Assembly: GCF_006345805.1 (NCBI RefSeq)
Contig: NC_043012.1
Location: 49,662,001 to 49,726,000, forward strand
Direction of reading: 5' to 3'
Source: Octopus sinensis
Taxonomy: Eukaryota
DNA: 64,000 bases
Shown here: positions 3,576-62,790 of the stretch, piece after piece
Position numbering within the stretch: the first letter of the stretch is position 1
Layout of the letters: the number at the start of each line of letters is the position of its first letter
Notes under the pieces: generated by a model
Databases searched by the model: none
The model's input: only the letters and a program-made list of their open reading frames with translations
What the model was told of the DNA's origin: nothing
Made by a program: the position numbers and the translations under genes

Positions 3576-4147
3576 GGCGGCGAGCTGGCAGAAACGTTAG
3601 CGTGCAGGGCGAAATGCTTAGCGGTATTCCGTCTGCCGTTACGTTCTGAGTTCAAATTCCACCGAGGTCGGCTTTGCCTTTCATCCTTTCGAAGTCGATA
3701 AATTAAGTACCAGTTATGCATTGGGTTCGATGTAATCGACTTAATACCTATGTCTGTCCTTGTTTGTCCTCTCTATGTTTAGCCCCTTGTGGGTAATAAG
3801 GAAATAGGTATTTCGTCTGCCGCTACGTCCTGAGTTCAAATTCTGCCGAGGTCGATTTTATCTTTCATCCTTTCGGGGTCGATAAATTAAGTACCAGTTA
3901 CGAACTGGGGTCGATATAATCGACTTAATCTGTTTGTCTGTCCTTGTTTGTCCTCTCTATGCTTAGCCCCTTGTGGGCAATAAAAAATAGGTATTTTGTC
4001 CGTCTGTACGCTCTGATTTCAAATTCCGTCGACTTTGCCTTTCATCCTTTCGGGGTCGAAAAATTAAGTACTATTTGCGTACTGGGTCGATCTAATCGAC
4101 TGTCTCCCTCCCTACAAATTTGGAATCTTGTGCCTAGATTAGAAAAG
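3576..4147 (+). mobile_element. SINE family A, head plus three internal units
   Basis: tRNA-like head GGCGGCGAGCTGGCAGAAACGTTAGC; units restart at GTATT at 3624, 3808 and 3991; last unit has the older-type tail. Confidence 0.9.
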
Positions 4148-6186: not shown

Positions 6187-7878
6187 TATATGAAAAAGAA
6201 ATATAATGGGGTAGAAGTGAATGAAGTTTATTTCGGAAAAAAAAACTTCCTTTCGTTTTCGTTATTCCTCATTCAACCCATCCAGTCTTGAGCACAGGAG
6301 ATGGAAATTATTACCAGACCGAATATTTGGCCCAAATTCTTGAAACATAGAGAACTGCACTAAAAGAAAGAAGGACAAAGTGATGATATATCATATATCA
6401 TACTGCTAGGAAGACAATAAGATGATTACAAAATTAGATCATATGATCTCTATTCATAGCTGTAGGCTATGGCTAATTTCTCTTTTATTGTGTGAATCAT
6501 TATCGTGTATTATATGATGTCATATCGAATGAGTGTGTGACAAAAACAAAATAAAAAATAAAAATAAAATGTACTATAACTTAACAAAATAACATCAGAG
6601 GTCACTGCTCTGTTGTGACATGTCTGCAACAACTGGATAATTCAATAGATATGGGATATATTAATAAACAAGTTTGTAGACTACGATGTAACTAAGTGAA
6701 AAATGTAATTTTGCCAAAAGGGAACAGTAAAAGATATCATACATTTTTAACAAACTTCGACTTCACAAATTTTTAATACCACAATAATGCATCTTATGGA
6801 AGTTTATATAATATTCTTCGGTGATCCTTTATAGTAATGGTTCCCATCCAGTTTTTTGCCAATAGACGCCTTTAATTTCTACTTTAATCGAGTGAACTCT
6901 CGTAACTCCATGATTAAAAAATCCTATCATATTTTTATAATTAAGAAATTGTATAAGAAATTTGCTAAAATATTTTGCTTACTGTCGAACAATCAGCAAT
7001 TTATTGCACAAACTTGAACAACAAAATCTCATATGGACCCCACTACCCAAGGGCCGTATTGAAGCAATTCAGAACGACTGTTCTATAGTGTGTGTAATAG
7101 AAATACGTTGCTATATTTGAAGAAGCCATATGATAAATACCATTGCTCATTAAATAGACAGTTTTTAGATTTGCCTACGTTTGATTCCCACATTGTCAAG
7201 AACAACATCTATTAATTTTCCTCTTAGTTTTACTTTATTGCAATGCGATACCGCTGGTAATCAATTAAGACTTATTAATTTCTTTTCTTTCGTGCTAAAG
7301 CTCATTGCATGTGGCAGGTGCGAATATCTTGTCTTGATAAACTGTAAGACACATTGCTAATAGCAACAGTTTATATGTAATAGCGCATGCAATATCTTTT
7401 AATGTAATAATTTATGCATTAAAGAGAAAAGACATAAAATTTTGATGTTGTTATCTAACCCCCAGATCGCATCTTATTGGTTTCAAATTTTTCGTATTTG
7501 GCCAGCATGCTCTGAGGTGGAGGTAAGTCGATGATATCGACCCCAGTGATCAACTGATACTTATTTTTATCGACCCCAAAAATTGAAAGGCAAAGATGGA
7601 CTCGGCGCGATTTTGCCCTGCCTGCTAATGAGTCTGCCGCATCTTCGTCTTAACACCAGATCACATTGTGTTAAAAAGAAACATAATGGAAAGCATTTCA
7701 ACTTTGGGCTTTCCCTATTTTTATTTAAACGACTAAGCTGTATTATATACCGTGTCCTAATAATTTGTATTAGGAGGTGGGGACTTCAAAGACATATTAA
7801 CACTACTCAAGTGGATCGAAAGATCACTCAGAGGATCACGTGTTTATATATATATATAATATATATATATATATATAG

Positions 7879-8619
7879 ATAACAATTTAGGAATGGCCTT
7901 AACAGGCCATTCGTCCACCAGAGAGAGCAGCCAGAACTCAAACCGCCAAGCAGTAGTAATTCAGAAATTACTACTGCTTGGCGGTTTGAGTTCTGGCTGC
8001 TCTCTCTGGTGGACGAATGGCCTGTCAAGGCCATTCCTAAATTGTTATATTTATATATTTTAGTCTTTGACTATTTTCTCTTTTCCACTAGGCCGCTGGT
8101 AGCGATAAATTTCTATTGAATTTTTTGCTACCCTAAATTGATTAATTGATAATTTTCTGACTAATTCTGAGATTGAATCGGCAGTTTATATTTACTGCTG
8201 ATGGATTGGCGCGAATACGTTGGTCTTGAAAATTTTAAGACAGATATTCCGGAGGCATTGATACAGACGCCTCGTGTATATTTGTTTCTCCCAGGTTTTT
8301 TACTGATGAAGTGTAACCTATGGTAGATTAGCTTAATTTAATTTAATTAAGCTAGTTTATCATTAAAAACACAGAAAGGATGCATCGTCTAAAAGATGAA
8401 TTAGGGTAAACGTTTTTAAATTTTCACCTAATTTCTGAATTACTACTGCTTGGCGGTTTGAGTTCTGGCTGCTCTCTCTGGTGGACGAATGGCCTGTTAA
8501 GGCCATTCCTAAATTGTTATATTTATATATTTTAGTCTTTGACTATTTTCTCTTTTCCACTAGGCCGCTGGTAGCGATAAATTTCTATTGAATTTTTTGC
8601 TACCCTAAATTGATTAATT
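7879..8619 (+). mobile_element. Penelope/retrozyme-like element: 83-bp inverted 5' segment plus ~1.4 direct units of 472 bp, inserted in (AT)n
   Basis: 7879-7961 and 7966-8048 are inverted repeats with 1 mismatch; 7966 onward repeats at 8438; (AT)n on both sides; clearly homologous to the reverse complement of the 60133-62246 unit. Confidence 0.8.
8295..8397 (+). ncRNA. Type I hammerhead ribozyme with extended stem II (slightly degenerate)
   Basis: GUUUUUUA-CUGAUGA-AGUGU...19-bp hairpin...ACACA-GAA-AGGAUGCAUCGU-C-UAAAAGAU. Core nucleotides intact; mismatches at 10.1/11.1 (A.A) and 15.2/16.2 (G.G). Confidence 0.7.
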
Positions 8620-8695
<76 letters not shown>

Positions 8696-8698
<3 letters not shown>

Positions 8699-9100
8699 AC
8701 AGGCGCTGCTGTGTGGAAAGAAGCTTGCTTCCCAACCACATGGTTCCGGGTTCAGTCCCACTGCATGGTACCTTGGGCAAGTGCATTCTGCAATAGCCTC
8801 GGGCCCTCGGGCCAACCAAAGCCTTGTGAGTGGATTTAGTGGACGGAAACTGAAAGAAGCTCGTCGTATATATGTATATATATATGTGTATGTTTGTGTG
8901 TCTGTGTTGCCCCCCCCATCGCTTGGCAACGGATGCTGGTGTGTTTACATACACGCAACTTGGCGTTTCGGCAAAAGGAGAACGATGGAATAAGCAATAG
9001 GCTTACAAAGAATAAGTCCTGGGGTCGATTTATTCGACTAATGGCGGTGTTGCAGCATAGCCGCAGTCAAATGACTGAAAGAAGTAAAAGAAAAAAAGAA
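8696..9100 (+). mobile_element. SINE family B
   Basis: Homologous along its length to 5763-6186. Confidence 0.9.
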
Positions 9101-15692: not shown

Positions 15693-16470
15693 AAGGCGGT
15701 GAGCTGGCAGAAACGTTAGCACGCCGGGCGAAATGCGTAGCCGTATTTCGTCTGTCGTTACCTTCTGAGTTCAAATTCTGCCGAGGTCGACCTTGCCTTT
15801 CATCCTTTCTGGGTCGATAAATTAAGTACCAGTTACGCACTGGTGTCGATAAAATCGACTTAATCTGCGTTTCTGTCCTTGTTCGTCCCCTCTGTGTTTA
15901 GCCCCTTGTGGGTAGTAAAGAAATAGGTATTTCGTCTGCATTACGTTCTGAGTTCAAATTCCGCCGAGGTTGACTTTGCCTTTCATCCTTTCCGGGTCGA
16001 TAAATTAAGTTCCAGCTACCCACTGGTGTCGATAAAATCGACTTAATCCGCGTGTCTGTCCTTGTTCGTCCCCTCTATGTTTAACCCCTTGTGGGTAGTA
16101 AAGAAATAGGTATTTTGTCTGCATTACGTTCTGAGCTCAAATTCCGCCGAAGACTACTTTGTCTTTCACCCTTTCGGGGTCGATAAATTAAGTACCAGTT
16201 ACACAGTGGGGTCGGTGTAATCGACTTAATCCATTTGTCTTTCCTTGTTTGACCCCTCTGTGTTTAGCCCCTTGTGGGTAGTAAAGAAATAGGTATTAGT
16301 CCAGGTATTATGTATTGATGGGGACTTTATGTTCTGATTCCGCCGAGGTTGACTTTACCTTTCATCCTTTTGGAGTCGATAAATTAAGATAAATTGCGTA
16401 CTAGAGTCGATCTAATCGACTAGACCCCACCCTTAAAATTTCGGGCCTTGTGCGTAGAGTAGAAAAGAAT
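15693..16470 (+). mobile_element. SINE family A array: head plus three 183-184-bp units plus an old-type terminal unit
   Basis: Units restart at GTATT at 15743, 15927, 16110 and 16293. Confidence 0.9.
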
Positions 16471-19525: not shown

Positions 19526-20530
19526 GCAGTGATGCGGATTAAGAAATTAGATATACTAAGCATAACAGATTGTGTATAAAATAAAAATATGTACATATAT
19601 CTACATGCAAAACGAGACAAAAATATTGGAGACTTTTAGACGATGAATATTTAAGTATAAGTGTATAGATATTTTGTTAATAGAGCCATCTTACATAAAG
19701 CACAAACGATAGTCTCTAAAAACAAATTTTGGTCTTATAACTCCTTACTTCATCTCTTTAAATTTTTTCTAGTTTGTATTCTGTATAAATTGTATCAATG
19801 GATATAGATATCTATATTTTTATACTTACGTGTTCATCATCTCACAAGGTCCATTTTTTCATTTTTTTAATCGTGTTTATATGTATACCTATATACATAT
19901 TTTATGTTTCATATCCATTTTGTTATATTTCATATATCAAATTTTTTATCCGTATAACTGCCTCCATATCTGCTCATCTTAATCCCTTTTCTAGCCATTC
20001 TGTTAAGACATCGGGGTGTAATTTTCGATCGTTTGAGCACTATTAAGTATAGATGTGACTTCTATACAGGGAATCTCTGGATCTTATCAGATGACTGTAT
20101 GTGTGTCTTCGGCTATATGCGCGCGCGCGCATGTGTGTGTGTTTGTGTGTGTGTGTGGTTGGTTGGTTAGGTGTGTAATTATTTAATGGCAATTCACTGC
20201 CAATACTAGTCTGCTTAAAGAATAAGTTTGTAATCTAAAAATGTACTGAGTAATCCTTCAGTTTCATATAGGTAAAATTATCTTTATTATAATTTAACAT
20301 AAAAATAGACATCAAGATAGACATAAACGTATATATATATATATATATATATATGCGTGTGTGTGTCTGTGCCTGTGTGTGTGTGCGTGTGCCTGTATGT
20401 CAAAGTGAATATACGTATATATATATACATAATATTATATATACGATATATATATAATTATTATGTATATAATATTATCTATACAATATCATATGTTTTA
20501 CACACACACACACACCACACACACACACAC

Positions 20531-20590
<60 letters not shown>

Positions 20591-20595
20591 TATAT

Positions 20596-20884
20596 AAAAG
20601 CAGAACAGCATCGGTTACGATGATGACTGTCCCAGCTGATACGATCAACGGAACAGCTCATGAAATTAACATGCAAGTGGCTGAGCAATCCACAGACAGG
20701 TGTACCCGTAACCTAGTTCCCAGGGCGATTCAGCGTGACTCATAGTGCGACAAAGCTGGCCCTTTGATATACTGGTACAACTCATTTTTACCAGTTCAGT
20801 GATCAAGGACAAGAACGCGTCACCGGGAATCGAACTCAAAACCTTACAATCGTGAGTCGAATGCCCTTACCATTAAACCCTTAA
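20596..20884 (-). mobile_element. SINE family C, copy 1 of a tandem duplication
   Basis: Homologous to 34606-34908; B-box-like GAGTTCGATTCC on the minus strand. Confidence 0.85.
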
Positions 20885-21050
20885 TATATATATATATATA
20901 TATATTATACATATATATATATATATATACACACATATATATATAATATATATATACACACATATATATATAATACACACGCACACACACATATATATAT
21001 ATTATATATATATATATATATATAATATATATATATATACATATATATAT

Positions 21051-21339
21051 AAAAGCAGAACAGCATCGGTTACGATGATGACTGTCCCAGCTGATACGAT
21101 CAACGGAACAGCTTATGAAATTAACATGCAAGTGGCTGAGCAATCCACAGACAGGTGTACCCGTAACCTAGTTCCCAGGGCGATTCAGCGTGACTCATAG
21201 TGCGACAAAGCTGGCCCTTTGATATACTGGTACAACTCATTTTTACCAGTTCAGTGATCAAGGACAAGAACGCGTCACCGGGAATCGAACTCAAAACCTT
21301 ACAATCGTGAGTCGAATGCCCTTACCATTAAACCCTTAA
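21051..21339 (-). mobile_element. SINE family C, copy 2 of a tandem duplication
   Basis: Same as 20596-20884 except one substitution seen (gctcatg/gcttatg); period 455 bp. Confidence 0.85.
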
Positions 21340-21433
21340 TATATATATATATGTATAATTTGCATATATCTATATATACATATACAATAAATATATATAA
21401 TATATATATACACACATATATATATAATACACA

Positions 21434-21468
<35 letters not shown>

Positions 21469-21995
21469 CTATGTATCTATATCTAGTACGTATATATATA
21501 TACATATATATATATTACATACACATACATACATGTATAATACATATATATGTACTTTTATATACATATGTATATATATATTTATATACACATATATGTA
21601 TAATATATATATATCTATATCCATACATATATATGCATATATCTAGGTATAATATATATATACATATGCATACATATGTACATACATGCATGCATGCGCA
21701 CATACATGCGCACAGAAACATGAAACACCGAAGTTGTATAAGCGGGAATTTGATCTGTTACTGGCCTTTCCAGATCTCCACAACTCCTTTTACTGTATGA
21801 ATTTATTTTGTTTGATGTTTCATTTGAATTGGCAATCGTTAGTAAATTAAAAGTAAGACATGGAGCGAGCAGAGACTTCAAAAGAATGGAATTGTAAAGG
21901 AAGATAGATTACACAATATCATCGTTTATTACGTGGAATGGGAGCGAGCATTATGTGTATATCTTGAAGGATTTATACAGCAATTTCTATCCCAG

Positions 21996-38215: not shown

Positions 38216-38598
38216 CAAGAACTAAACGCTCCTTTCTCTTAATACATGAACATTATTATGGAAATTCACACTATACTGGCCGTATGTGTATAAGGGAGTT
38301 TGTATGGTTGTGATGAAATTCCCAATCAGTGTGTCTCTGGAGGCATGTTGAATCAGATATTTCATCAACACCAAAGTTTAACATATTCATATTCACATCA
38401 ATAGCAAGCTTTGAAGTGAAATAGAATGTCGGAAGTGAACACAACAGCGACATGATCATCAATATCATCACCAGCCACGTCATTGCCACCACCACTAACG
38501 TCATCATCGTGGTTGTCATCGTCATAATCATCGTAGTCGTCGCAGTTGTGGGCGGCGGCAGCGGCGGCAGTGGTGGTGATGATGGTAGTAGTGGTAGT

Positions 38599-38623
38599 CA
38601 TCATCATCATCATCATCATCGTT

Positions 38624-38658
<35 letters not shown>

Positions 38659-38713
38659 CATCATCTTCATCATCATCTTCATCATCATCTTCATCCTCAT
38701 CATCATCGTTATC

Positions 38714-38798
<85 letters not shown>

Positions 38799-38858
38799 CT
38801 ATCATCATCATAAATTCCCATCATCTGGAATTAATAGAACAAGGCGTGCCACTGCTCT

Positions 38859-38918
<60 letters not shown>

Positions 38919-38919
38919 A

Positions 38920-38961
<42 letters not shown>
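38599..38961. repeat. Compound (CAT)n, (TAC)n, (AAT)n microsatellite
   Basis: Directly visible; source of the poly-H/M/D/I ORFs. Confidence 0.95.
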
Positions 38962-38962
<1 letters not shown>

Positions 38963-39575
38963 GAGTGCTGCTGCTACAAGCTCATCTGCAGCTACAAAAT
39001 ACAGCTTAGTAGAAGAATTATTTGAGTTTCGGAAATATTCTCTGCTGATTCTTTTGAGATACTACATCTTACATTCAATCACTGATAAGGCCAGGTTTTC
39101 TTTCCATACTTCTGGAGTCAATAATGTGAAGTATACGTTAAATACGTAGGTTCTGGCCATGTGCTGACATACAGAAACATTACAACATTTAATTGACGAG
39201 CGATTTACAGTGTCGGAAAAAATATATTTGCGTTATGTATCGTTTTTAAGTAAAAATTAAAATTAACTCACACACTAGTTCCATACCATTTCATTATTTT
39301 CCCAAGTAGTTATTCAATTGTTTGTTCATTGAGCTGATGGAACAATCAATTGGTTGCTATCTTTCTCTCTCAGCGTCCTCTCATCGCCCTTCTCGTCCTC
39401 CATCAAACGTTTAAATCTTGCCGTGGTCTTTTTTAATTTTCATCGCTCTGGTGTCAAAAAAATAATGTAGAAGTCATATAGAGGGCGACTTGGCAAATTA
39501 CCCGCAACACAGAAAGAAATTGCAGGCCTTACGCCTGTAGGAGAAAGAATAATTATTGTTGCTGTTGTTTTTCTA

Positions 39576-58931: not shown

Positions 58932-60091
58932 ATGACACACTTAGATATTGGTATCACTAATTCACGGATGAAATACTGCGAAGCAGATATAGTGCAGGCC
59001 AGACCAGACTATCATCTCATCTGCTAGAAAACAACATCATTTCTCTATTTTCTCTCCATGTGAAACATATTCTATTTCATTATTTCAGGCGAGTGGGCAG
59101 TGTACGATGTATGGTGAGGCTTACGTTGTGGCTTATTTCGACAGGGTGTAATAGGTAGAGAGAAGAAGACCTGGTTTAAATTACATGCATAAATATACAT
59201 GCACGAGCTTCATTATGATAATGATCTCCGATTTAGGCGCATGACCAAGAACTTCAGAGAATGCCCCCGCCCCCACGAAACGAATGAACACCATAGCTTA
59301 GCTTAGTTGGATTTGAAAAAATATTGCAAAAAATGTTTGCCCTACAATAATGAATCAGCTAGACCGCCTTAATATTTTACATGTTGGGGTTTATTCAGTC
59401 AATAAACCCCAACAGCTGTTGTCTGTAGAGGCAATAGCGGATGACCTGTGGACTTCAGAATTCATTGAAGAGCGTCATGCCTTAAATGAGATCAAAAGAA
59501 TGTATTACCCATCCTTGAATCTGCTGAATGAATCGCAAAATCAGTTCAACATCAACACACACATACATCTCCATTCTCACATAACTGCCATTCTGTCCTT
59601 CCTCTCTTTCCATCACCTTCCATTCTTCCACAGCAAATACACACAGAAATACTTACATATTCTTTATACTGGTCAAAAAGGATACTTGTACTTGTGTTGT
59701 ACGTCCATTAATGTTATATCGCCTGAAGAAATAAATCCACGAAGAAGATCAACCCGTTGCCCACGGATACTACGGACTACATTGTATTCATCCCAGGAAT
59801 ATGGACTGTGACTTTAAGAGGGATGAAATTTGTGGAAATGCGCGTGGCGATGTATTAAATGTTCATAAAAGCCATCCAAGGATTATTGTTATAATTATTA
59901 TATTTATCCTACGCATTATATCGGAACAACGCGATGCAACTAAAAAAAAAAGCAAAAACAAAAAAAAAACTGGTTCACCATTCAGTATCATTATGTGGCC
60001 TGCATAATAGAATAGGAGCTGTATGTGCTTATTCAAAACGTTTCCCATAAAAAATTTAATGTATATATATTATATATATATATATACACAC

Positions 60092-60140
<49 letters not shown>

Positions 60141-60360
60141 TCAATTAGGGTGGCATGAAAAATTTTGTAGAAATTTATTGCCACCAGCGGCCCAGTGGGA
60201 AAAAATTAAATAGTCATAGACCATTTTTAAGTTCAACAATTAACAATTAAGGAACGCCATAATAGGCCATTCACCCACTAGAAATAACAGCCAAAGCTTC
60301 TACCGCAAATAAAGATCAATTCCGTTAACAGGAGAAAATTAAAAAAACATTTACCCTGTA

Positions 60361-60466
60361 ATTTCTTGTACGGTATACCGTTTCATTCGCTGTTTAATGG
60401 TAAACTAACCTGATTAAATTAAATCAAGCCAATCTCCATAAGCCCTCGAATTCTTCAGCAAGAAAT
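60361..60466 (-). ncRNA. Type I hammerhead ribozyme, array unit 1
   Basis: AUUUCUUG-CUGAAGA-AUUCG...CGAAU-GAA-ACGG-UAUA-CCGU-A-CAAGAAAU; all core nucleotides canonical. Confidence 0.85.
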
Positions 60467-60837
60467 AGCTCAAGTCGGAACAGATATTTACACGAGGCAT
60501 CTCGAACCTTGCCAAGGCAATATCTGACCTAAAATTTTCAATCGCGCACTCGCGCCAAATTTATCGGCAGCAAATAAATTCAGCCGTCGATTCCATTACG
60601 GAACTACCAAAAAATCATAATTAATCAATATAGGGTGGCATGGAAAATTTTGTAGAAATTTATTGCCACCAGCCCAGTGGGAAAAAATTAAATAGTCATA
60701 GACCATTTTTAAGTTCAACAATTAACAATTAAGGAACGGCCATAATAGGCCTTCACCCACTAAATAACAGCCAAAGCTTCTACGCAAATAAGATCAATTC
60801 CGTTAACAGAGAAAATTAAAAAAACATTTACCCTGTA

Positions 60838-60943
60838 ATTCTTGTACGGTATACCGTTTCATTCGCTGTTTAATGGTAAACTAACCTGATTAAATTAAAT
60901 CAAGCCAATCTTCCATAAGCCCTCGAATTCTTCAGCAAGAAAT
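60838..60943 (-). ncRNA. Type I hammerhead ribozyme, array unit 2
   Basis: Same as unit 1; stem I 3' arm lacks one A (6-bp pairing). Confidence 0.85.
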
Positions 60944-61322
60944 AGCTCAAGTCGGAACAGATATTTACACGAGGCATCTCGAACCTTGCCAAGGCAATAT
61001 CTGACCTAAAATTTTCAATCGTCGCACTCGCGCCAAATTTATCGGCAGCAATAAATATCACCGTCGATTCCATTACGGAATTAACCAAAAAATTCATAAT
61101 TAATCAATATAGGGTGGCATGGAAAATTTTGTAGAAATTTATTGCCACCAGCGGCCAGTGGGAAAAAATTAATAGTCATAGACCATTTTTAAGTTCAACA
61201 ATTAACATTAAGGAACGGCCATAATAGGCCATTCACCCACTAGAAATAACAGCCAAAGCTTCTACCGCAAATAAAGATCAATTCCGTTAACAGGAGAAAA
61301 TTAAAAAAACATTTACCCTGTA

Positions 61323-61429
61323 ATTTCTTGTACGGTATACCGTTTCATTCGCTGTTTAATGGTAAACTAACCTGATTAAATTAAATCAAGCCAATCTTCC
61401 ATAAGCCCTCGAATTCTTCAGCAAGAAAT
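61323..61429 (-). ncRNA. Type I hammerhead ribozyme, array unit 3 (107 nt, no indels in the motif)
   Basis: Stem I 8 bp perfect; CUGAAGA 61421-61415; stem II 5 bp, 7x7 internal loop, then a 19-bp hairpin; GAAA 61346-61343; predicted cleavage 3' of A at 61331. Confidence 0.88.
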
Positions 61430-61803
61430 AGCTCAGTCGGAACAGATATTTACACGAGGCATCTCGAACCTTGCCAAGGCAATATCTGACCTAAAATTTT
61501 CAAATCGTCGCACTCGCGCCAAATTATCGGCAGCAAATAAATATCAGCCGTCGATTCCATTACGGAATTAACCAAAATTCATAATTAATCAATATAGGGT
61601 GGCATGGAAATTTGTAGAAATTTATTGCCACCAGCGGCCCAGTGGGAAAAAATTAAATAGTCATAGACCATTTTTAAGTTCAACAATTAACAATTAGGAA
61701 CGGCCATAATAGGCCATTCACCCCTAGAAATAACAGCCAAAGCTTCTACCGCATAAAGATCATTCCGTTAACAGGAGAAAATTAAAAAAACATTTACCCT
61801 GTA

Positions 61804-61909
61804 ATTTCTTGTACGGTATACCGTTTCATTCGCTGTTTAATGGTAACTAACCTGATTAAATTAAATCAAGCCAATCTTCCATAAGCCCTCGAATTCTTCA
61901 GCAAGAAAT
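61804..61909 (-). ncRNA. Type I hammerhead ribozyme, array unit 4
   Basis: Same core and stems; 1-nt deletion in distal stem II. Confidence 0.85.
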
Positions 61910-62283
61910 AGCTCAAGTCGGAACAGATATTTACACGAGGCATCTCGAACCTTGCCAAGGCAATATCTGACCTAAAATTTTCAAATCGTCGCACTCGCGC
62001 CAAATTTATCGGCAGCAAATAAATATCAGCCGTCGATTCCATTACGGAATTAACCAAAAAATTCATAATTAATCAATTAGTTTACCATTAAACAGCGAAT
62101 GAAACGGTATACCGTACAAGAAATTACAGGGTAAATGTTTTTTTTAATTTCTCCTGTTAACGGAATTGATCTTTATTTGCGGTAGAGCTTTGGCTGTTAT
62201 TTCTAGTGGGTGAATGGCCTATTATGGCCGTTCCTTAATTGTTAATATATATATATATTATATATATATATAATATATATATA

Positions 62284-62316
<33 letters not shown>

Positions 62317-62378
62317 GATATCTATATATATATATATAATATATTATATATATTATATTATATATATATATATATATT

Positions 62379-62615
62379 GGGGGCTCGTGGCTTAGTGTTA
62401 GAGTGTCAGCACCATGATCGTAAGATGGTGGTTTCTATTTCGGACCGGGCGACGCGTTGTGTTCTTGAGCAAAATACTTCATTTCACGTTGCTCCAGTCC
62501 ACTCAGCTGGCAAAAATGAGTAACACCACTGCGTTGGTCCAGCTGGGGAACACATACGCCATTGAAACCGGGAGACCGGGTCCATGAGACTGGTTAGGCT
62601 TTAAAAAGGGCGCAT
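62379..62615 (+). mobile_element. SINE with family C-type head and centre and a second tail type
   Basis: GGGGGCTCGTGGCTTAGTG...GTTGTGTTCTTGAGCAAAATAC...CACTCAGCTGGCAAAAATGAG, tail ...AAAAGGGCGCAT. Confidence 0.8.
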
Positions 62616-62616
62616 T

Positions 62617-62684
<68 letters not shown>

Positions 62685-62752
62685 GTATATATAATATATA
62701 ATAAATATATATATTATATATAAATAAATAAATAAATTAAATAAATATATAA

Positions 62753-62783
<31 letters not shown>

Positions 62784-62790
62784 TATATAT

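What the first reader, a model, noticed from the sequence alone, without database searches (positions are those of the whole stretch)
60133..62246. Tandem array of four complete hammerhead ribozymes with an unusually long stem II: candidate octopus retrozyme producing ~484-nt monomers
Seen: every ~484-bp unit encodes on the minus strand AUUUCUUG CUGAAGA AUUCG AGGGCUU [AUGGAAGAUUGGCUUGAUU UAAUUU AAUCAGGUUAGUUUACCAU] UAAACAG CGAAU GAA ACGG UAUA CCGU A CAAGAAAU. This gives an 8-bp stem I, an intact CUGANGA/GAAA/UH core, a 4-bp self-complementary stem III, and a ~68-nt stem II made of a 5-bp base, an internal loop and a 19-position hairpin with 18 pairs. Predicted cleavage sites are at 60369, 60845, 61331 and 61812. 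Established: type I HHRs in tandem repeats define metazoan non-LTR retrozymes and occur in Penelope-like elements, where self-cleavage releases monomers that can circularise; those HHRs usually have short stems II. Inference: this is a non-autonomous, self-cleaving RNA replicon family with an atypical ribozyme architecture. I cannot tell whether it is already catalogued.
Basis: partly seen in the sequence, partly recalled or inferred. Interest (0 to 1): 0.92.

Follow-up and report, generated by a model that had tools for sequence, protein, structure and literature searches.

The report
Tandem hammerhead retrozyme with Penelope-style ends
A non-coding repeat of about 484 bp, present four times in a row, encodes in every copy a well-formed self-cleaving hammerhead RNA with an unusually long second stem; it belongs to the known class of animal "retrozyme" mobile elements, and its ends look like footprints of Penelope-like retrotransposon machinery.

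Summary
Window 60133-62077 (minus strand) holds 4.0 copies of a 476-486 bp unit. Each carries a type I hammerhead: an 8-bp stem I, CUGAAGA/GAAA/UA core, a 68-nt stem II and a 12-nt palindromic stem III.

The motif is not chance. A relaxed descriptor is expected 0.05 times per random 64 kb. Its core differs only at the two free positions, N7 and H17.

Both loci share one architecture: an inverted 5'-truncated copy upstream, direct tandem copies, the same two termini in unit coordinates, and (TA)n on every flank. This is the published insertion signature of Penelope-like elements (PLEs).

It is therefore a non-autonomous, PLE-mobilised non-LTR retrozyme, a known kind. What is unusual is a conserved 19-bp hairpin grafted onto loop II and an A-U at 10.1-11.1. 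Together these keep it at 15.7 bits against Rfam Hammerhead_1 (threshold 34).

Cleavage, circular RNA and the octopus origin could not be tested here.

The parts
60133..62077 (-). F1 direct tandem array, 4.0 units of 476-486 bp. It starts at unit position q223 and ends at q235 (q1 = first nt after the hammerhead cut).
   Evidence: TRF; blastn and nhmmer; unit alignment
62069..62246 (+). F1 inverted, 5'-truncated partial unit at the upstream end of the array (unit q438-486 plus q1-130). It holds only the 3' half of a hammerhead and crosses the cleavage site.
   Evidence: Inverted repeats I1, I2 and I9; blastn; alignment; plus-strand GAAACGGTATACCGTA with H17 at 62116
61804..61909 (-). Hammerhead copy A. 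Cut after A at 61812. One nt is missing in the 3' arm of the distal stem II hairpin.
   Evidence: MFE = hammerhead junction, -30.5 kcal/mol, z = -5.28
61323..61429 (-). Hammerhead copy B, the reference copy. Cut after A at 61331.
   Evidence: Rfam RF00163 full-length sub-threshold match, 15.7 bits
60837..60943 (-). Hammerhead copy C. Cut after A at 60845. A 1-nt deletion in the 3' strand of stem I leaves 6 bp.
60361..60466 (-). Hammerhead copy D. Cut after A at 60369. One nt is missing in the 5' arm of the distal hairpin.
60134..60185 (-). F1 terminal 'site 2' module: conserved hairpin GGTGGCA...TGCCACC followed by CTAATTGATTAATTA, which abuts (TA)n. This is the 3' end of the direct array.
   Evidence: G-C to A-U covariation in the hairpin (columns 190/220)
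62212..62246 (+). F1 terminal 'site 1' module: hairpin GAATGGCC-N6-GGCCGTTC followed by CTTAATTGTTAAT, which abuts (TA)n. This is the outer end of the inverted copy.
60062..60135 (.). (TA)n microsatellite flanking the 3' end of the F1 array
   Evidence: TRF; flank read-out
62245..62377 (.). (TA)n microsatellite flanking the inverted-copy end of F1
   Evidence: TRF
7966..8621 (+). F2: second, divergent family member (67% identical). About 1.4 direct units, period 472, ending at the same unit position q235.
   Evidence: blastn; sequence; alignment; nhmmer; identity
7880..7965 (-). F2 inverted 5'-truncated partial unit (q~37-128), ending at the same site 1 terminus as in F1
8295..8397 (+). F2 hammerhead: GUUUUUUA CUGAUGA AGUGU..hairpin..ACACA GAA AGGAUGCAUCGU C|UAAAAGAU, cut after C at 8389. 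It has an A.A at 10.1/11.1 and a G.G in stem III, so it is probably a decayed copy.
   Evidence: The hammerhead fold is 7.3 kcal/mol above the MFE. No Rfam hammerhead hit.
7845..7881 (.). (TA)n flanking the F2 inverted end
   Evidence: TRF
8619..8694 (.). (TA)n flanking the F2 3' end
   Evidence: TRF

Best explanation
This is a non-autonomous retrotransposon of the metazoan non-LTR retrozyme type. It is a ~484-nt non-coding unit carrying a type I hammerhead ribozyme, and it was copied into the genome by the reverse transcriptase/GIY-YIG endonuclease of a Penelope-like element (PLE).

Shown from the sequence:
- Every unit has an intact hammerhead core with three helices that are under selection.
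- Stem III is a 12-nt perfect palindrome, so it can form either a 4-bp hairpin or a 12-bp double-hammerhead helix.
- Loop II carries a conserved 19-bp hairpin.
- Two independent loci sit inside (TA)n tracts. Both have an inverted 5'-truncated copy upstream of direct tandem copies.
- Both loci have identical termini about 130 and 235 nt downstream of the cut site. Each terminus lies just 3' of a conserved hairpin.

Inferred life cycle:
1. The array is transcribed from an unknown promoter into a multimeric RNA.
2. Each hammerhead cuts after GUA. It acts alone or as a dimer with its neighbour and releases 476-486-nt monomers with 5'-OH and 2',3'-cyclic phosphate ends.
3. A host RtcB-type tRNA ligase circularises the monomers into a stable, highly paired circular RNA.
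4. A PLE protein made elsewhere in the genome nicks AT-rich (TA)n DNA on both strands. It starts reverse transcription at the two internal sites of a multimeric or circular template.
5. One strand yields the direct tandem copies, ending at q235. The other yields the inverted truncated copy, ending at q130.
For: Hammerhead motif:
- Exact motif and cleavage sites.
- The MFE of all four copies equals the hammerhead junction, z = -4.8 to -5.5.
- Descriptor hits occur only here, with 0.05 expected by chance.
- Rfam Hammerhead_1 aligns over its full length with 57 nt inserted in loop II.

Selection:
- F1 and F2 differ by 25 substitutions in 76 helix nt, yet 36 of 38 pairs are kept. The null expectation is 21.5-24.5 +/- 2.4, and 0 of 200,000 simulations reach 36.
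- There are 8 double compensatory changes, including the palindromic loop UAUA to UGCA.
- The core differs only at N7 and H17.
- The distal hairpin is the most conserved island of the unit, at 0.88 identity.

Retrozyme traits:
- No ORF above 66 aa.
- GC 0.36.
- Monomer folds at -129 to -138 kcal/mol, z = -3.8 to -6.9, 63-67% paired.
- Shared hairpins with covariation along the unit.
- The hammerhead dimer cofold is 13 kcal/mol better than two monomers.

PLE signature:
- An inverted truncated copy lies upstream at both loci.
- The termini are identical in both loci.
- All four ends abut (TA)n, which covers only 3-5% of the window.

Literature:
- Inverted 5'-truncated copy, tail and (TA)n bias in PLEs (PMC8557442).
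- Both strands cut and extended, two internal reverse-transcription start sites downstream of the hammerhead, AT-rich targets (PMC11167929).
- PLE hammerheads have a large helix II and a palindromic helix III (PMC4209133).
- Definition of retrozymes (PMC7229834).
- Retrozymes as PLE pLTR derivatives (bioRxiv 10.64898/2026.07.22.740005).
Against: - No RNA data, so cleavage, monomers and circles are untested.
- There is no reverse transcriptase or endonuclease ORF anywhere in the 64 kb. The proposed helper is hypothetical.
- The match is below Rfam's threshold: 15.7 against 34 bits, and no hit at all in the wider searches.
- The 10.1-11.1 pair is A-U, not the near-universal G-C (PMC3088659).
- There are only two loci, and the F2 hammerhead is thermodynamically disfavoured with two mismatches.
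- The two termini lie about 105 nt apart. The published PLE 'tail' is 30-40 bp.
- In the studied PLE, hammerhead cleavage was not needed for insertion, and no reads ended at the cut site (PMC11167929). The role of cleavage in mobility is therefore open.
- Array length could also have changed by unequal crossing-over after insertion.
Confidence: 0.75

Rival explanations
1. These are leftovers of an autonomous Penelope-like element: tandem pseudo-LTRs whose ORF was lost or never copied. They are not a separate non-autonomous family.
For: PLE pLTRs carry type I hammerheads with a large helix II and a palindromic helix III (PMC4209133). PLE insertions are partial tandems with an inverted truncated copy (PMC8557442). 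Xenopus retrozyme families are sister to PLE pLTRs (bioRxiv 10.64898/2026.07.22.740005). The architecture seen fits either reading.
Against: Two diverged loci (67% identity) both consist only of the ~480-bp unit in head-to-tail register. Neither shows any trace of ORF sequence. The unit closes on itself with period 472-486, which is what a short autonomous template gives and not what a truncated 3-kb element gives.
Confidence: 0.13
2. This is ordinary satellite DNA amplified at the DNA level by unequal crossing-over or replication slippage. The hammerhead is an inert relic.
For: It is a tandem, AT-rich, non-coding repeat. F1 copies are nearly identical, as in homogenised satellites. No expression data exist.
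Against: Selection on the RNA helices is strong. Two unlinked loci share the same termini, inverted partial copies and (TA)n targets. DNA-level amplification does not predict these shared features.
Confidence: 0.08
3. This is a chance resemblance to a hammerhead, or an assembly artefact such as a fold-back chimera creating the inverted copy.
For: Rfam gives no hit at threshold. Copies differ mostly by 1-nt indels typical of long-read errors.
Against: A relaxed descriptor is expected 0.05 times per 64 kb, and the observed motifs far exceed its minimum helix lengths. Covariation with a second locus is strong. The same inverted-copy architecture recurs at the independent locus 7880-8621.
Confidence: 0.02

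Closest known systems
Metazoan non-LTR retrozymes (Cervera & de la Pena 2020, PMC7229834), for example the 350-390 bp Mytilus galloprovincialis repeats
   Same: Short tandem, non-coding, low-GC repeats with one type I hammerhead per unit. The monomer RNA is predicted to be highly self-paired. Multimers of a few units are typical: 75% of families have at most 7 (bioRxiv 10.64898/2026.07.22.740005).
   Different: The unit, at 476-486 nt, is above the 170-400 nt range of the 2020 paper, though inside the 51-972 bp range of the 2026 survey. Helix II is 68 nt instead of about 4 bp plus a loop. 10.1-11.1 is A-U. Cephalopods are not mentioned in the papers I could read. Expression is untested.
Hammerheads in the pseudo-LTRs of Penelope-like elements (Cervera & de la Pena 2014, PMC4209133; Poseidon PAc of Anolis, PMC11167929)
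   Same: Type I hammerhead with a larger-than-usual helix II and a palindromic helix III that allows dimers. AT-rich or (TA)n targets. An inverted 5'-truncated copy lies upstream. Fixed internal termini lie downstream of the hammerhead.
   Different: There is no RT/EN ORF. Helix III is a stable 4-bp hairpin rather than 0-2 bp. Helix II is far longer than the 6-8 bp of PLE min-hammerheads. The distance between the two termini is about 105 nt rather than 30-40 bp.
Newt satellite 2 and axolotl retrozymes (hammerheads active as dimers; PMC7229834)
   Same: Tandem ~330-350 bp repeats with a palindromic helix III/loop 3. The dimeric hammerhead is favoured; here the cofold is -78.8 against 2 x -32.9 kcal/mol.
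   Different: Here the monomeric helix III (4 bp plus a tetraloop) should already support single-motif folding. No loop 1/loop 2 tertiary motif is recognisable.
Rfam Hammerhead_1 (RF00163)
   Same: The full 45-position model aligns to 61427-61325. The core, all three stems and the cut site fall at the predicted places.
   Different: The score is 15.7 bits against a gathering score of 34. 57 nt are inserted in loop II, and the stem II base is AUUCG/CGAAU instead of GUCC/GGAC. Annotation pipelines that use Rfam thresholds will miss it.
Naiad-clade PLEs, which have 'HHR_half_core' cases (PMC8557442)
   Same: (TA)n insertion bias. The two halves of the hammerhead core are separated by much more than the canonical spacer (35-50 nt there, 68 nt here). 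Naiad remnants are reported in Octopus spp.
   Different: No sequence comparison was possible because the supplement is not held. The link is a lead only.

Membership tests
Hammerhead ribozyme, type I | Conserved core C3-U4-G5-A6-N7-G8-A9 ... G12-A13-A14 ... A15.1/U16.1-H17 | tested here: met
   All four F1 copies and the F2 copy have it. F1 and F2 differ only at N7 (A/U) and H17 (A/C).
Hammerhead ribozyme, type I | Three helices around the core, with helix I open-ended | tested here: met
   The MFE equals the junction in 4 of 4 F1 copies. 36 of 38 pairs are kept in F2 despite 25 substitutions, with 8 compensatory doubles.
Hammerhead ribozyme, type I | G10.1-C11.1 closing pair of helix II, the most conserved pair after 15.1-16.1 (PMC3088659) | tested here: not met
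   A-U in F1 and A.A in F2. Natural active variants with U.U at this position are known (PMC3088659), so this lowers the expected rate and does not exclude membership.
Hammerhead ribozyme, type I | Reaches the Rfam RF00163 gathering score | tested here: not met
   15.7 bits against 34. No hit at gathering or at E<=10 in 2.8 kb. F2 has no hammerhead hit.
Hammerhead ribozyme, type I | Site-specific Mg2+-dependent self-cleavage 3' of H17 | not testable with these tools
   Needs in vitro transcription or RNA end mapping.
Hammerhead ribozyme, type I | Loop 1/loop 2 tertiary contact of fast natural hammerheads | tested here: inconclusive
   Stem I is a plain 8-bp helix. The 7/7 internal loop sits 5 bp from the core, where loop 2 would be, but no conserved contact motif could be scored.
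Metazoan non-LTR retrozyme | Short head-to-tail repeats, each with a type I hammerhead, and no LTRs | tested here: met
   4.0 units of 476-486 bp, each with a hammerhead.
Metazoan non-LTR retrozyme | Non-coding and low GC (<45-50%) | tested here: met
   Longest ORF is 66 aa and not conserved between units. GC is 0.36 and 0.35.
Metazoan non-LTR retrozyme | Monomer RNA predicted to be stable and highly self-paired | tested here: met
   z = -3.8 to -6.9, 63-67% paired, both linear and circular. Conserved hairpins show covariation.
Metazoan non-LTR retrozyme | Expressed as linear and circular monomer RNAs | not testable with these tools
   No transcriptome is available.
Metazoan non-LTR retrozyme | Co-occurrence with autonomous PLEs in the genome | not testable with these tools
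   No RT/EN ORF in the window.
Penelope-like element insertion signature | An inverted 5'-truncated copy adjacent to the upstream end of direct partial tandems | tested here: met
   F1 62069-62246 and F2 7880-7965.
Penelope-like element insertion signature | AT-rich or (TA)n target sites | tested here: met
   All four ends abut (TA)n. (TA)n covers 3.4-5.1% of the window.
Penelope-like element insertion signature | Fixed internal reverse-transcription start sites downstream of the hammerhead, giving a 'tail' at one end | tested here: inconclusive
   The same two termini (q~130 and q~235) occur in both loci, each next to a conserved hairpin. There are only two loci, and the spacing is 105 nt against the published 30-40 bp.
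Penelope-like element (autonomous) | ORF with telomerase-like RT and GIY-YIG endonuclease | tested here: not met
   No ORF of 120 aa or more has a credible Pfam domain (only two sub-threshold matches in one ORF at 38452-39009), and there is none in or near the array. The element is at most non-autonomous.

The most novel reading that the evidence does not exclude
The conserved 19-bp hairpin grafted onto loop II may be a functional module, for example a recognition site for the PLE protein or a switch controlling cleavage. It would then define a hammerhead subclass that standard descriptors and Rfam thresholds cannot see. If so, PLE lineages reported to lack canonical hammerheads or to have only 'half cores' could in fact carry long-helix-II hammerheads. 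The Naiad clade is one such lineage: it targets (TA)n and has remnants in Octopus. This element could then be its non-autonomous partner.
Probability: 0.2. Interest if true: 0.7.

Novelty: new member of a known kind. Interest (0 to 1): 0.45.

Why it matters
The class is known, so the value lies in three details.

First, this is a natural hammerhead whose helix II carries a selected 45-nt hairpin and whose 10.1-11.1 pair is A-U. It scores less than half of Rfam's threshold. Genome annotations probably undercount such ribozymes, and it offers a natural test of how much helix II extension the fold tolerates.

Second, two independent insertions share two fixed termini, inverted truncated copies and (TA)n targets. 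This is genomic evidence at the level of insertion junctions that a retrozyme is copied by Penelope-type target-primed reverse transcription from internal start sites. That link has so far been supported mainly by co-occurrence and pLTR phylogeny.

Third, the inverted copy of F1 runs across the cleavage site. Its template was therefore an uncleaved multimer or a circle, which bears on whether cleavage precedes reverse transcription.

Tried and rejected
- Rfam at gathering threshold on the whole window gave 0 hits. At E<=10 on 2.8 kb it gave only AT-repeat noise. The hammerhead model surfaced only in a 131-nt search.
- I looked for relatives elsewhere. Degenerate patterns conserved between F1 and F2 gave 0 matches in metagenome contigs, 0 in viral contigs and 0 in prokaryote genomes with the first pattern.
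- The second genome pattern hit one 26-nt stretch inside a bacterial MAG contig (BTTE01000094.1, locus L001). There is no wider similarity, so I rejected it as chance.
- A 66-aa spurious ORF of the unit, used as bait for eukaryotic assemblies in the protein collection, gave no candidate.
- Organism check: ORFs of 120 aa or more have no credible Pfam domain. The ORF next to the array is low-complexity. There are no tRNA genes. Origin stays unverified.
- A literal search of papers for six sequence strings from the element and a neighbouring repeat gave 0 papers.
- The supplement of PMC8557442 and the paper PMC5785218 are not held.
- nhmmer with an F1+F2 profile found no further copies in the window.
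- I considered by eye a Pol III A/B-box reading of GGTTCGAGATGCC in F1. I dropped it because the motif is not conserved in F2 and no A box lies at a suitable distance.
- An alternative cleavage register 10 nt downstream (stem I TCTTG/CAGGG) was rejected. It leaves a 1-bp helix III and is not supported in F2.
Full report
**1. The observation**

Tandem Repeats Finder reports a 485-bp period array at 60133-62077, with 4.0 copies and 96% matches. On the minus strand, CUGAAGA occurs at 61901, 61421, 60935 and 60458. GAAACGGTATACCGTA places H17 at 61812, 61331, 60845 and 60369. The released monomers would be 481, 486 and 476 nt.

Without any constraint it folds into the proposed junction:
- an 8-bp stem I;
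- an unpaired CUGAAGA;
- a 5-bp stem II base, a 7/7 internal loop and a 19-position hairpin with one A.A and a 6-nt loop;
- GAA;
- a 4-bp stem III with a UAUA loop, then A17.

The energy is -32.9 kcal/mol, z = -4.84, and 0 of 200 shuffles fold as well. The other three copies fold the same way, with z = -4.9 to -5.5.

Three copies carry a single-base deletion each: one in stem I and two in the distal hairpin. Differences among units are mostly 1-nt indels (29 gap columns against 14 substitution columns), which could be assembly errors.

A relaxed type I descriptor finds nothing else in the window except one motif at 8303. It is expected 0.05 times per random 64 kb.

**2.

(a) The stretch 62069-62246 is not a fifth direct unit. 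It is an inverted partial copy. It covers unit positions q438-486 plus q1-130, so it crosses the cleavage site.

(b) A second, diverged member of the family lies at 7880-8621 on the plus strand. It is 67% identical over the unit. It has the same layout: an inverted truncated copy (7880-7965), then about 1.4 direct units (7966-8621). nhmmer with a profile of both finds no further copies in the window.

**3. Selection on the ribozyme**

I aligned the two hammerheads by structure.
- Stem I has two double compensatory changes (C-G to U-A, G-C to A-U) and two G.U-type changes.
- The stem II base has three doubles.
- The distal hairpin has one double and four single pair-preserving changes. Its A.A becomes U-A.
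- Stem III has two doubles, one of them inside the palindromic loop (UAUA to UGCA). That one matters only if two hammerheads pair through a 12-bp helix III.

In all, 25 of 76 helix nucleotides differ, yet 36 of 38 pairs survive. Random placement of the same number of substitutions keeps 21.5-24.5 +/- 2.4 pairs, and none of 200,000 simulations reaches 36. The 13 core positions differ only at N7 and H17, the two that are free to vary.

The F2 copy has an A.A at 10.1/11.1 and a G.G in stem III. Its hammerhead fold lies 7.3 kcal/mol above its MFE. It is probably a decayed copy.

**4. The rest of the unit**

There is no ORF above 66 aa, and the ORFs differ between units. GC is 0.36. Monomers fold to -129 to -138 kcal/mol as linear or circular RNA. 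The z-scores are -3.8 to -6.9, with 63-67% of bases paired.

RNAalifold on three F1 units plus F2 finds shared hairpins with G-C to A-U covariation at columns 97/173, 190/220, 274/294 and 334/385.

The most conserved islands are:
- the distal hairpin of helix II (0.88 identity);
- q172-195 (0.84);
- the two segments that end the insertions (0.80 each).

**5. Insertion architecture**

In both loci the direct array ends at q~235 (...CCACCCTA(T/A)ATTGATTAATTA|(TA)n). The inverted copy ends at q~130 (...GGCC(G/A)TTCCT(T/A)AATTGTTA|(TA)n). Each terminus lies about 10 nt 3' of a conserved hairpin and has a similar CCTWAATTG(A)TTAA tail.

All four ends abut (TA)n, which covers 3.4-5.1% of the window. 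The flanks beyond the (TA)n tracts are unrelated, so these are independent insertions and not a segmental duplication.

The literature describes this signature for Penelope-like elements:
- Partial tandems, an inverted 5'-truncated copy next to the upstream end, a 'tail' at one end and a (TA)n bias (PMC8557442).
- For a purified Poseidon protein: cutting of AT-rich DNA, extension of both strands, and reverse transcription starting at two internal sites about 90 nt downstream of the hammerhead cut (PMC11167929).

PLE hammerheads are type I, with a larger helix II and a palindromic helix III that allows dimers (PMC4209133). Here the dimer cofold is 13 kcal/mol better than two monomers.

**6. Mechanism**

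Shown: the motif, its selection, the structured non-coding unit, the shared termini, the inverted copies and the (TA)n targets.

Inferred:
1. The array is transcribed.
2. The hammerheads cut after GUA, giving ~480-nt monomers.
3. A host tRNA ligase circularises them, as shown for mussel and axolotl retrozymes (PMC7229834).
4. A PLE protein supplied in trans performs target-primed reverse transcription from the two internal sites.

Because the F1 inverted copy crosses the cleavage site, its template was uncleaved or circular. The direct F1 array begins at q223 and ends at q235, which is four units plus 13 nt. I note this but cannot interpret it, because F2 does not repeat it.

**7. Comparison with the known**

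The element meets the testable features of a metazoan non-LTR retrozyme (PMC7229834). Its unit length lies within the 51-972 bp range of a 2026 survey. That survey also argues that retrozymes derive from PLE pLTRs (bioRxiv 10.64898/2026.07.22.740005).

It departs from typical hammerheads in two ways: a 68-nt helix II, and A-U at 10.1-11.1. That pair is the most conserved one after 15.1-16.1 (PMC3088659).

Rfam Hammerhead_1 aligns over its whole length, with 57 nt inserted in loop II. It scores only 15.7 bits against 34, and nothing appears at normal thresholds. Giant-squid annotation found 235 Hammerhead_1 loci with Rfam (PMC6962438). Cephalopod hammerheads are therefore known, but this architecture would be missed.

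I found no paper that mentions retrozymes in octopus beyond passing references, and none that prints these sequences. Dfam and Repbase could not be consulted.

**8. What could not be done**

No relatives were retrievable from the public collections on hand. One 26-nt hit in a bacterial MAG is chance. The source organism could not be verified. Cleavage and expression are untested.

**9. Verdict**

The feature is real and correctly described. It is a new family, with a variant hammerhead architecture, of a known kind of element. Interest is moderate, because the class is established. The extended helix II and the junction-level link to Penelope-type reverse transcription are the points worth following.

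Noticed in passing
window 62380-62620 (between the (TA)n tracts 62245-62377 and 62622-62790): A ~240-bp SINE-like insert sits inside the same (TA)n tract that received the retrozyme array, with (TA)n on both sides. The tract looks like a nested insertion hotspot. ARAGORN calls no tRNA there.
   Followed up: partly
window 3623-4101 and 15743-16297: Two short tandem arrays (2.6 and 3.0 copies, 83-89% matches) of a 183-184 bp unit. The unit contains a tRNA B-box-like GTTCAAATTC segment and may be a SINE-derived tandem repeat.
   Followed up: no
window 20517-21514: A 455-bp tandem repeat (2.2 copies, 95% matches) whose unit begins with (CA)n/(TA)n microsatellite. It is another repeat embedded in TA-rich sequence.
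   Followed up: no
window 8696-8760: Immediately after the (TA)n that flanks F2 there is a tRNA-like SINE head (…GGTTCCGGGTTCAGTCCCA).
   Followed up: no
whole window: Microsatellite density is very high: 113 TRF rows, with many (TA)n, (AAT)n and (TCA)n tracts. GC is 0.29-0.41. There is no ORF of 120 aa or more with a credible Pfam domain. This is compatible with a repeat-rich, gene-poor invertebrate region, but the organism was not identified.
   Followed up: partly
window 60133-62077: Differences among the four F1 units are dominated by single-base deletions, often in homopolymers (29 gap columns against 14 substitution columns). This pattern suggests uncorrected long-read assembly errors and not divergence.
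   Followed up: partly
window 60845-61330 (unit q10-27 against q470-485): In the consensus fold of the free monomer, the 5' segment AGGGUAAAUGUUUU pairs with the GAAACGGUAUACC part of the hammerhead core and helix III (columns 14-27 with 480-494). This would be a hammerhead-inactive conformation that could protect monomers or circles from re-cleavage.
   Followed up: no
L001 5466-5491 (BTTE01000094.1, bacterial MAG): A 26-nt exact match to the conserved TTGAAAATTTTAAGACAGATATT segment of F2 lies inside what reads as bacterial coding sequence. There is no wider similarity, so I judged it a chance hit.
   Followed up: yes
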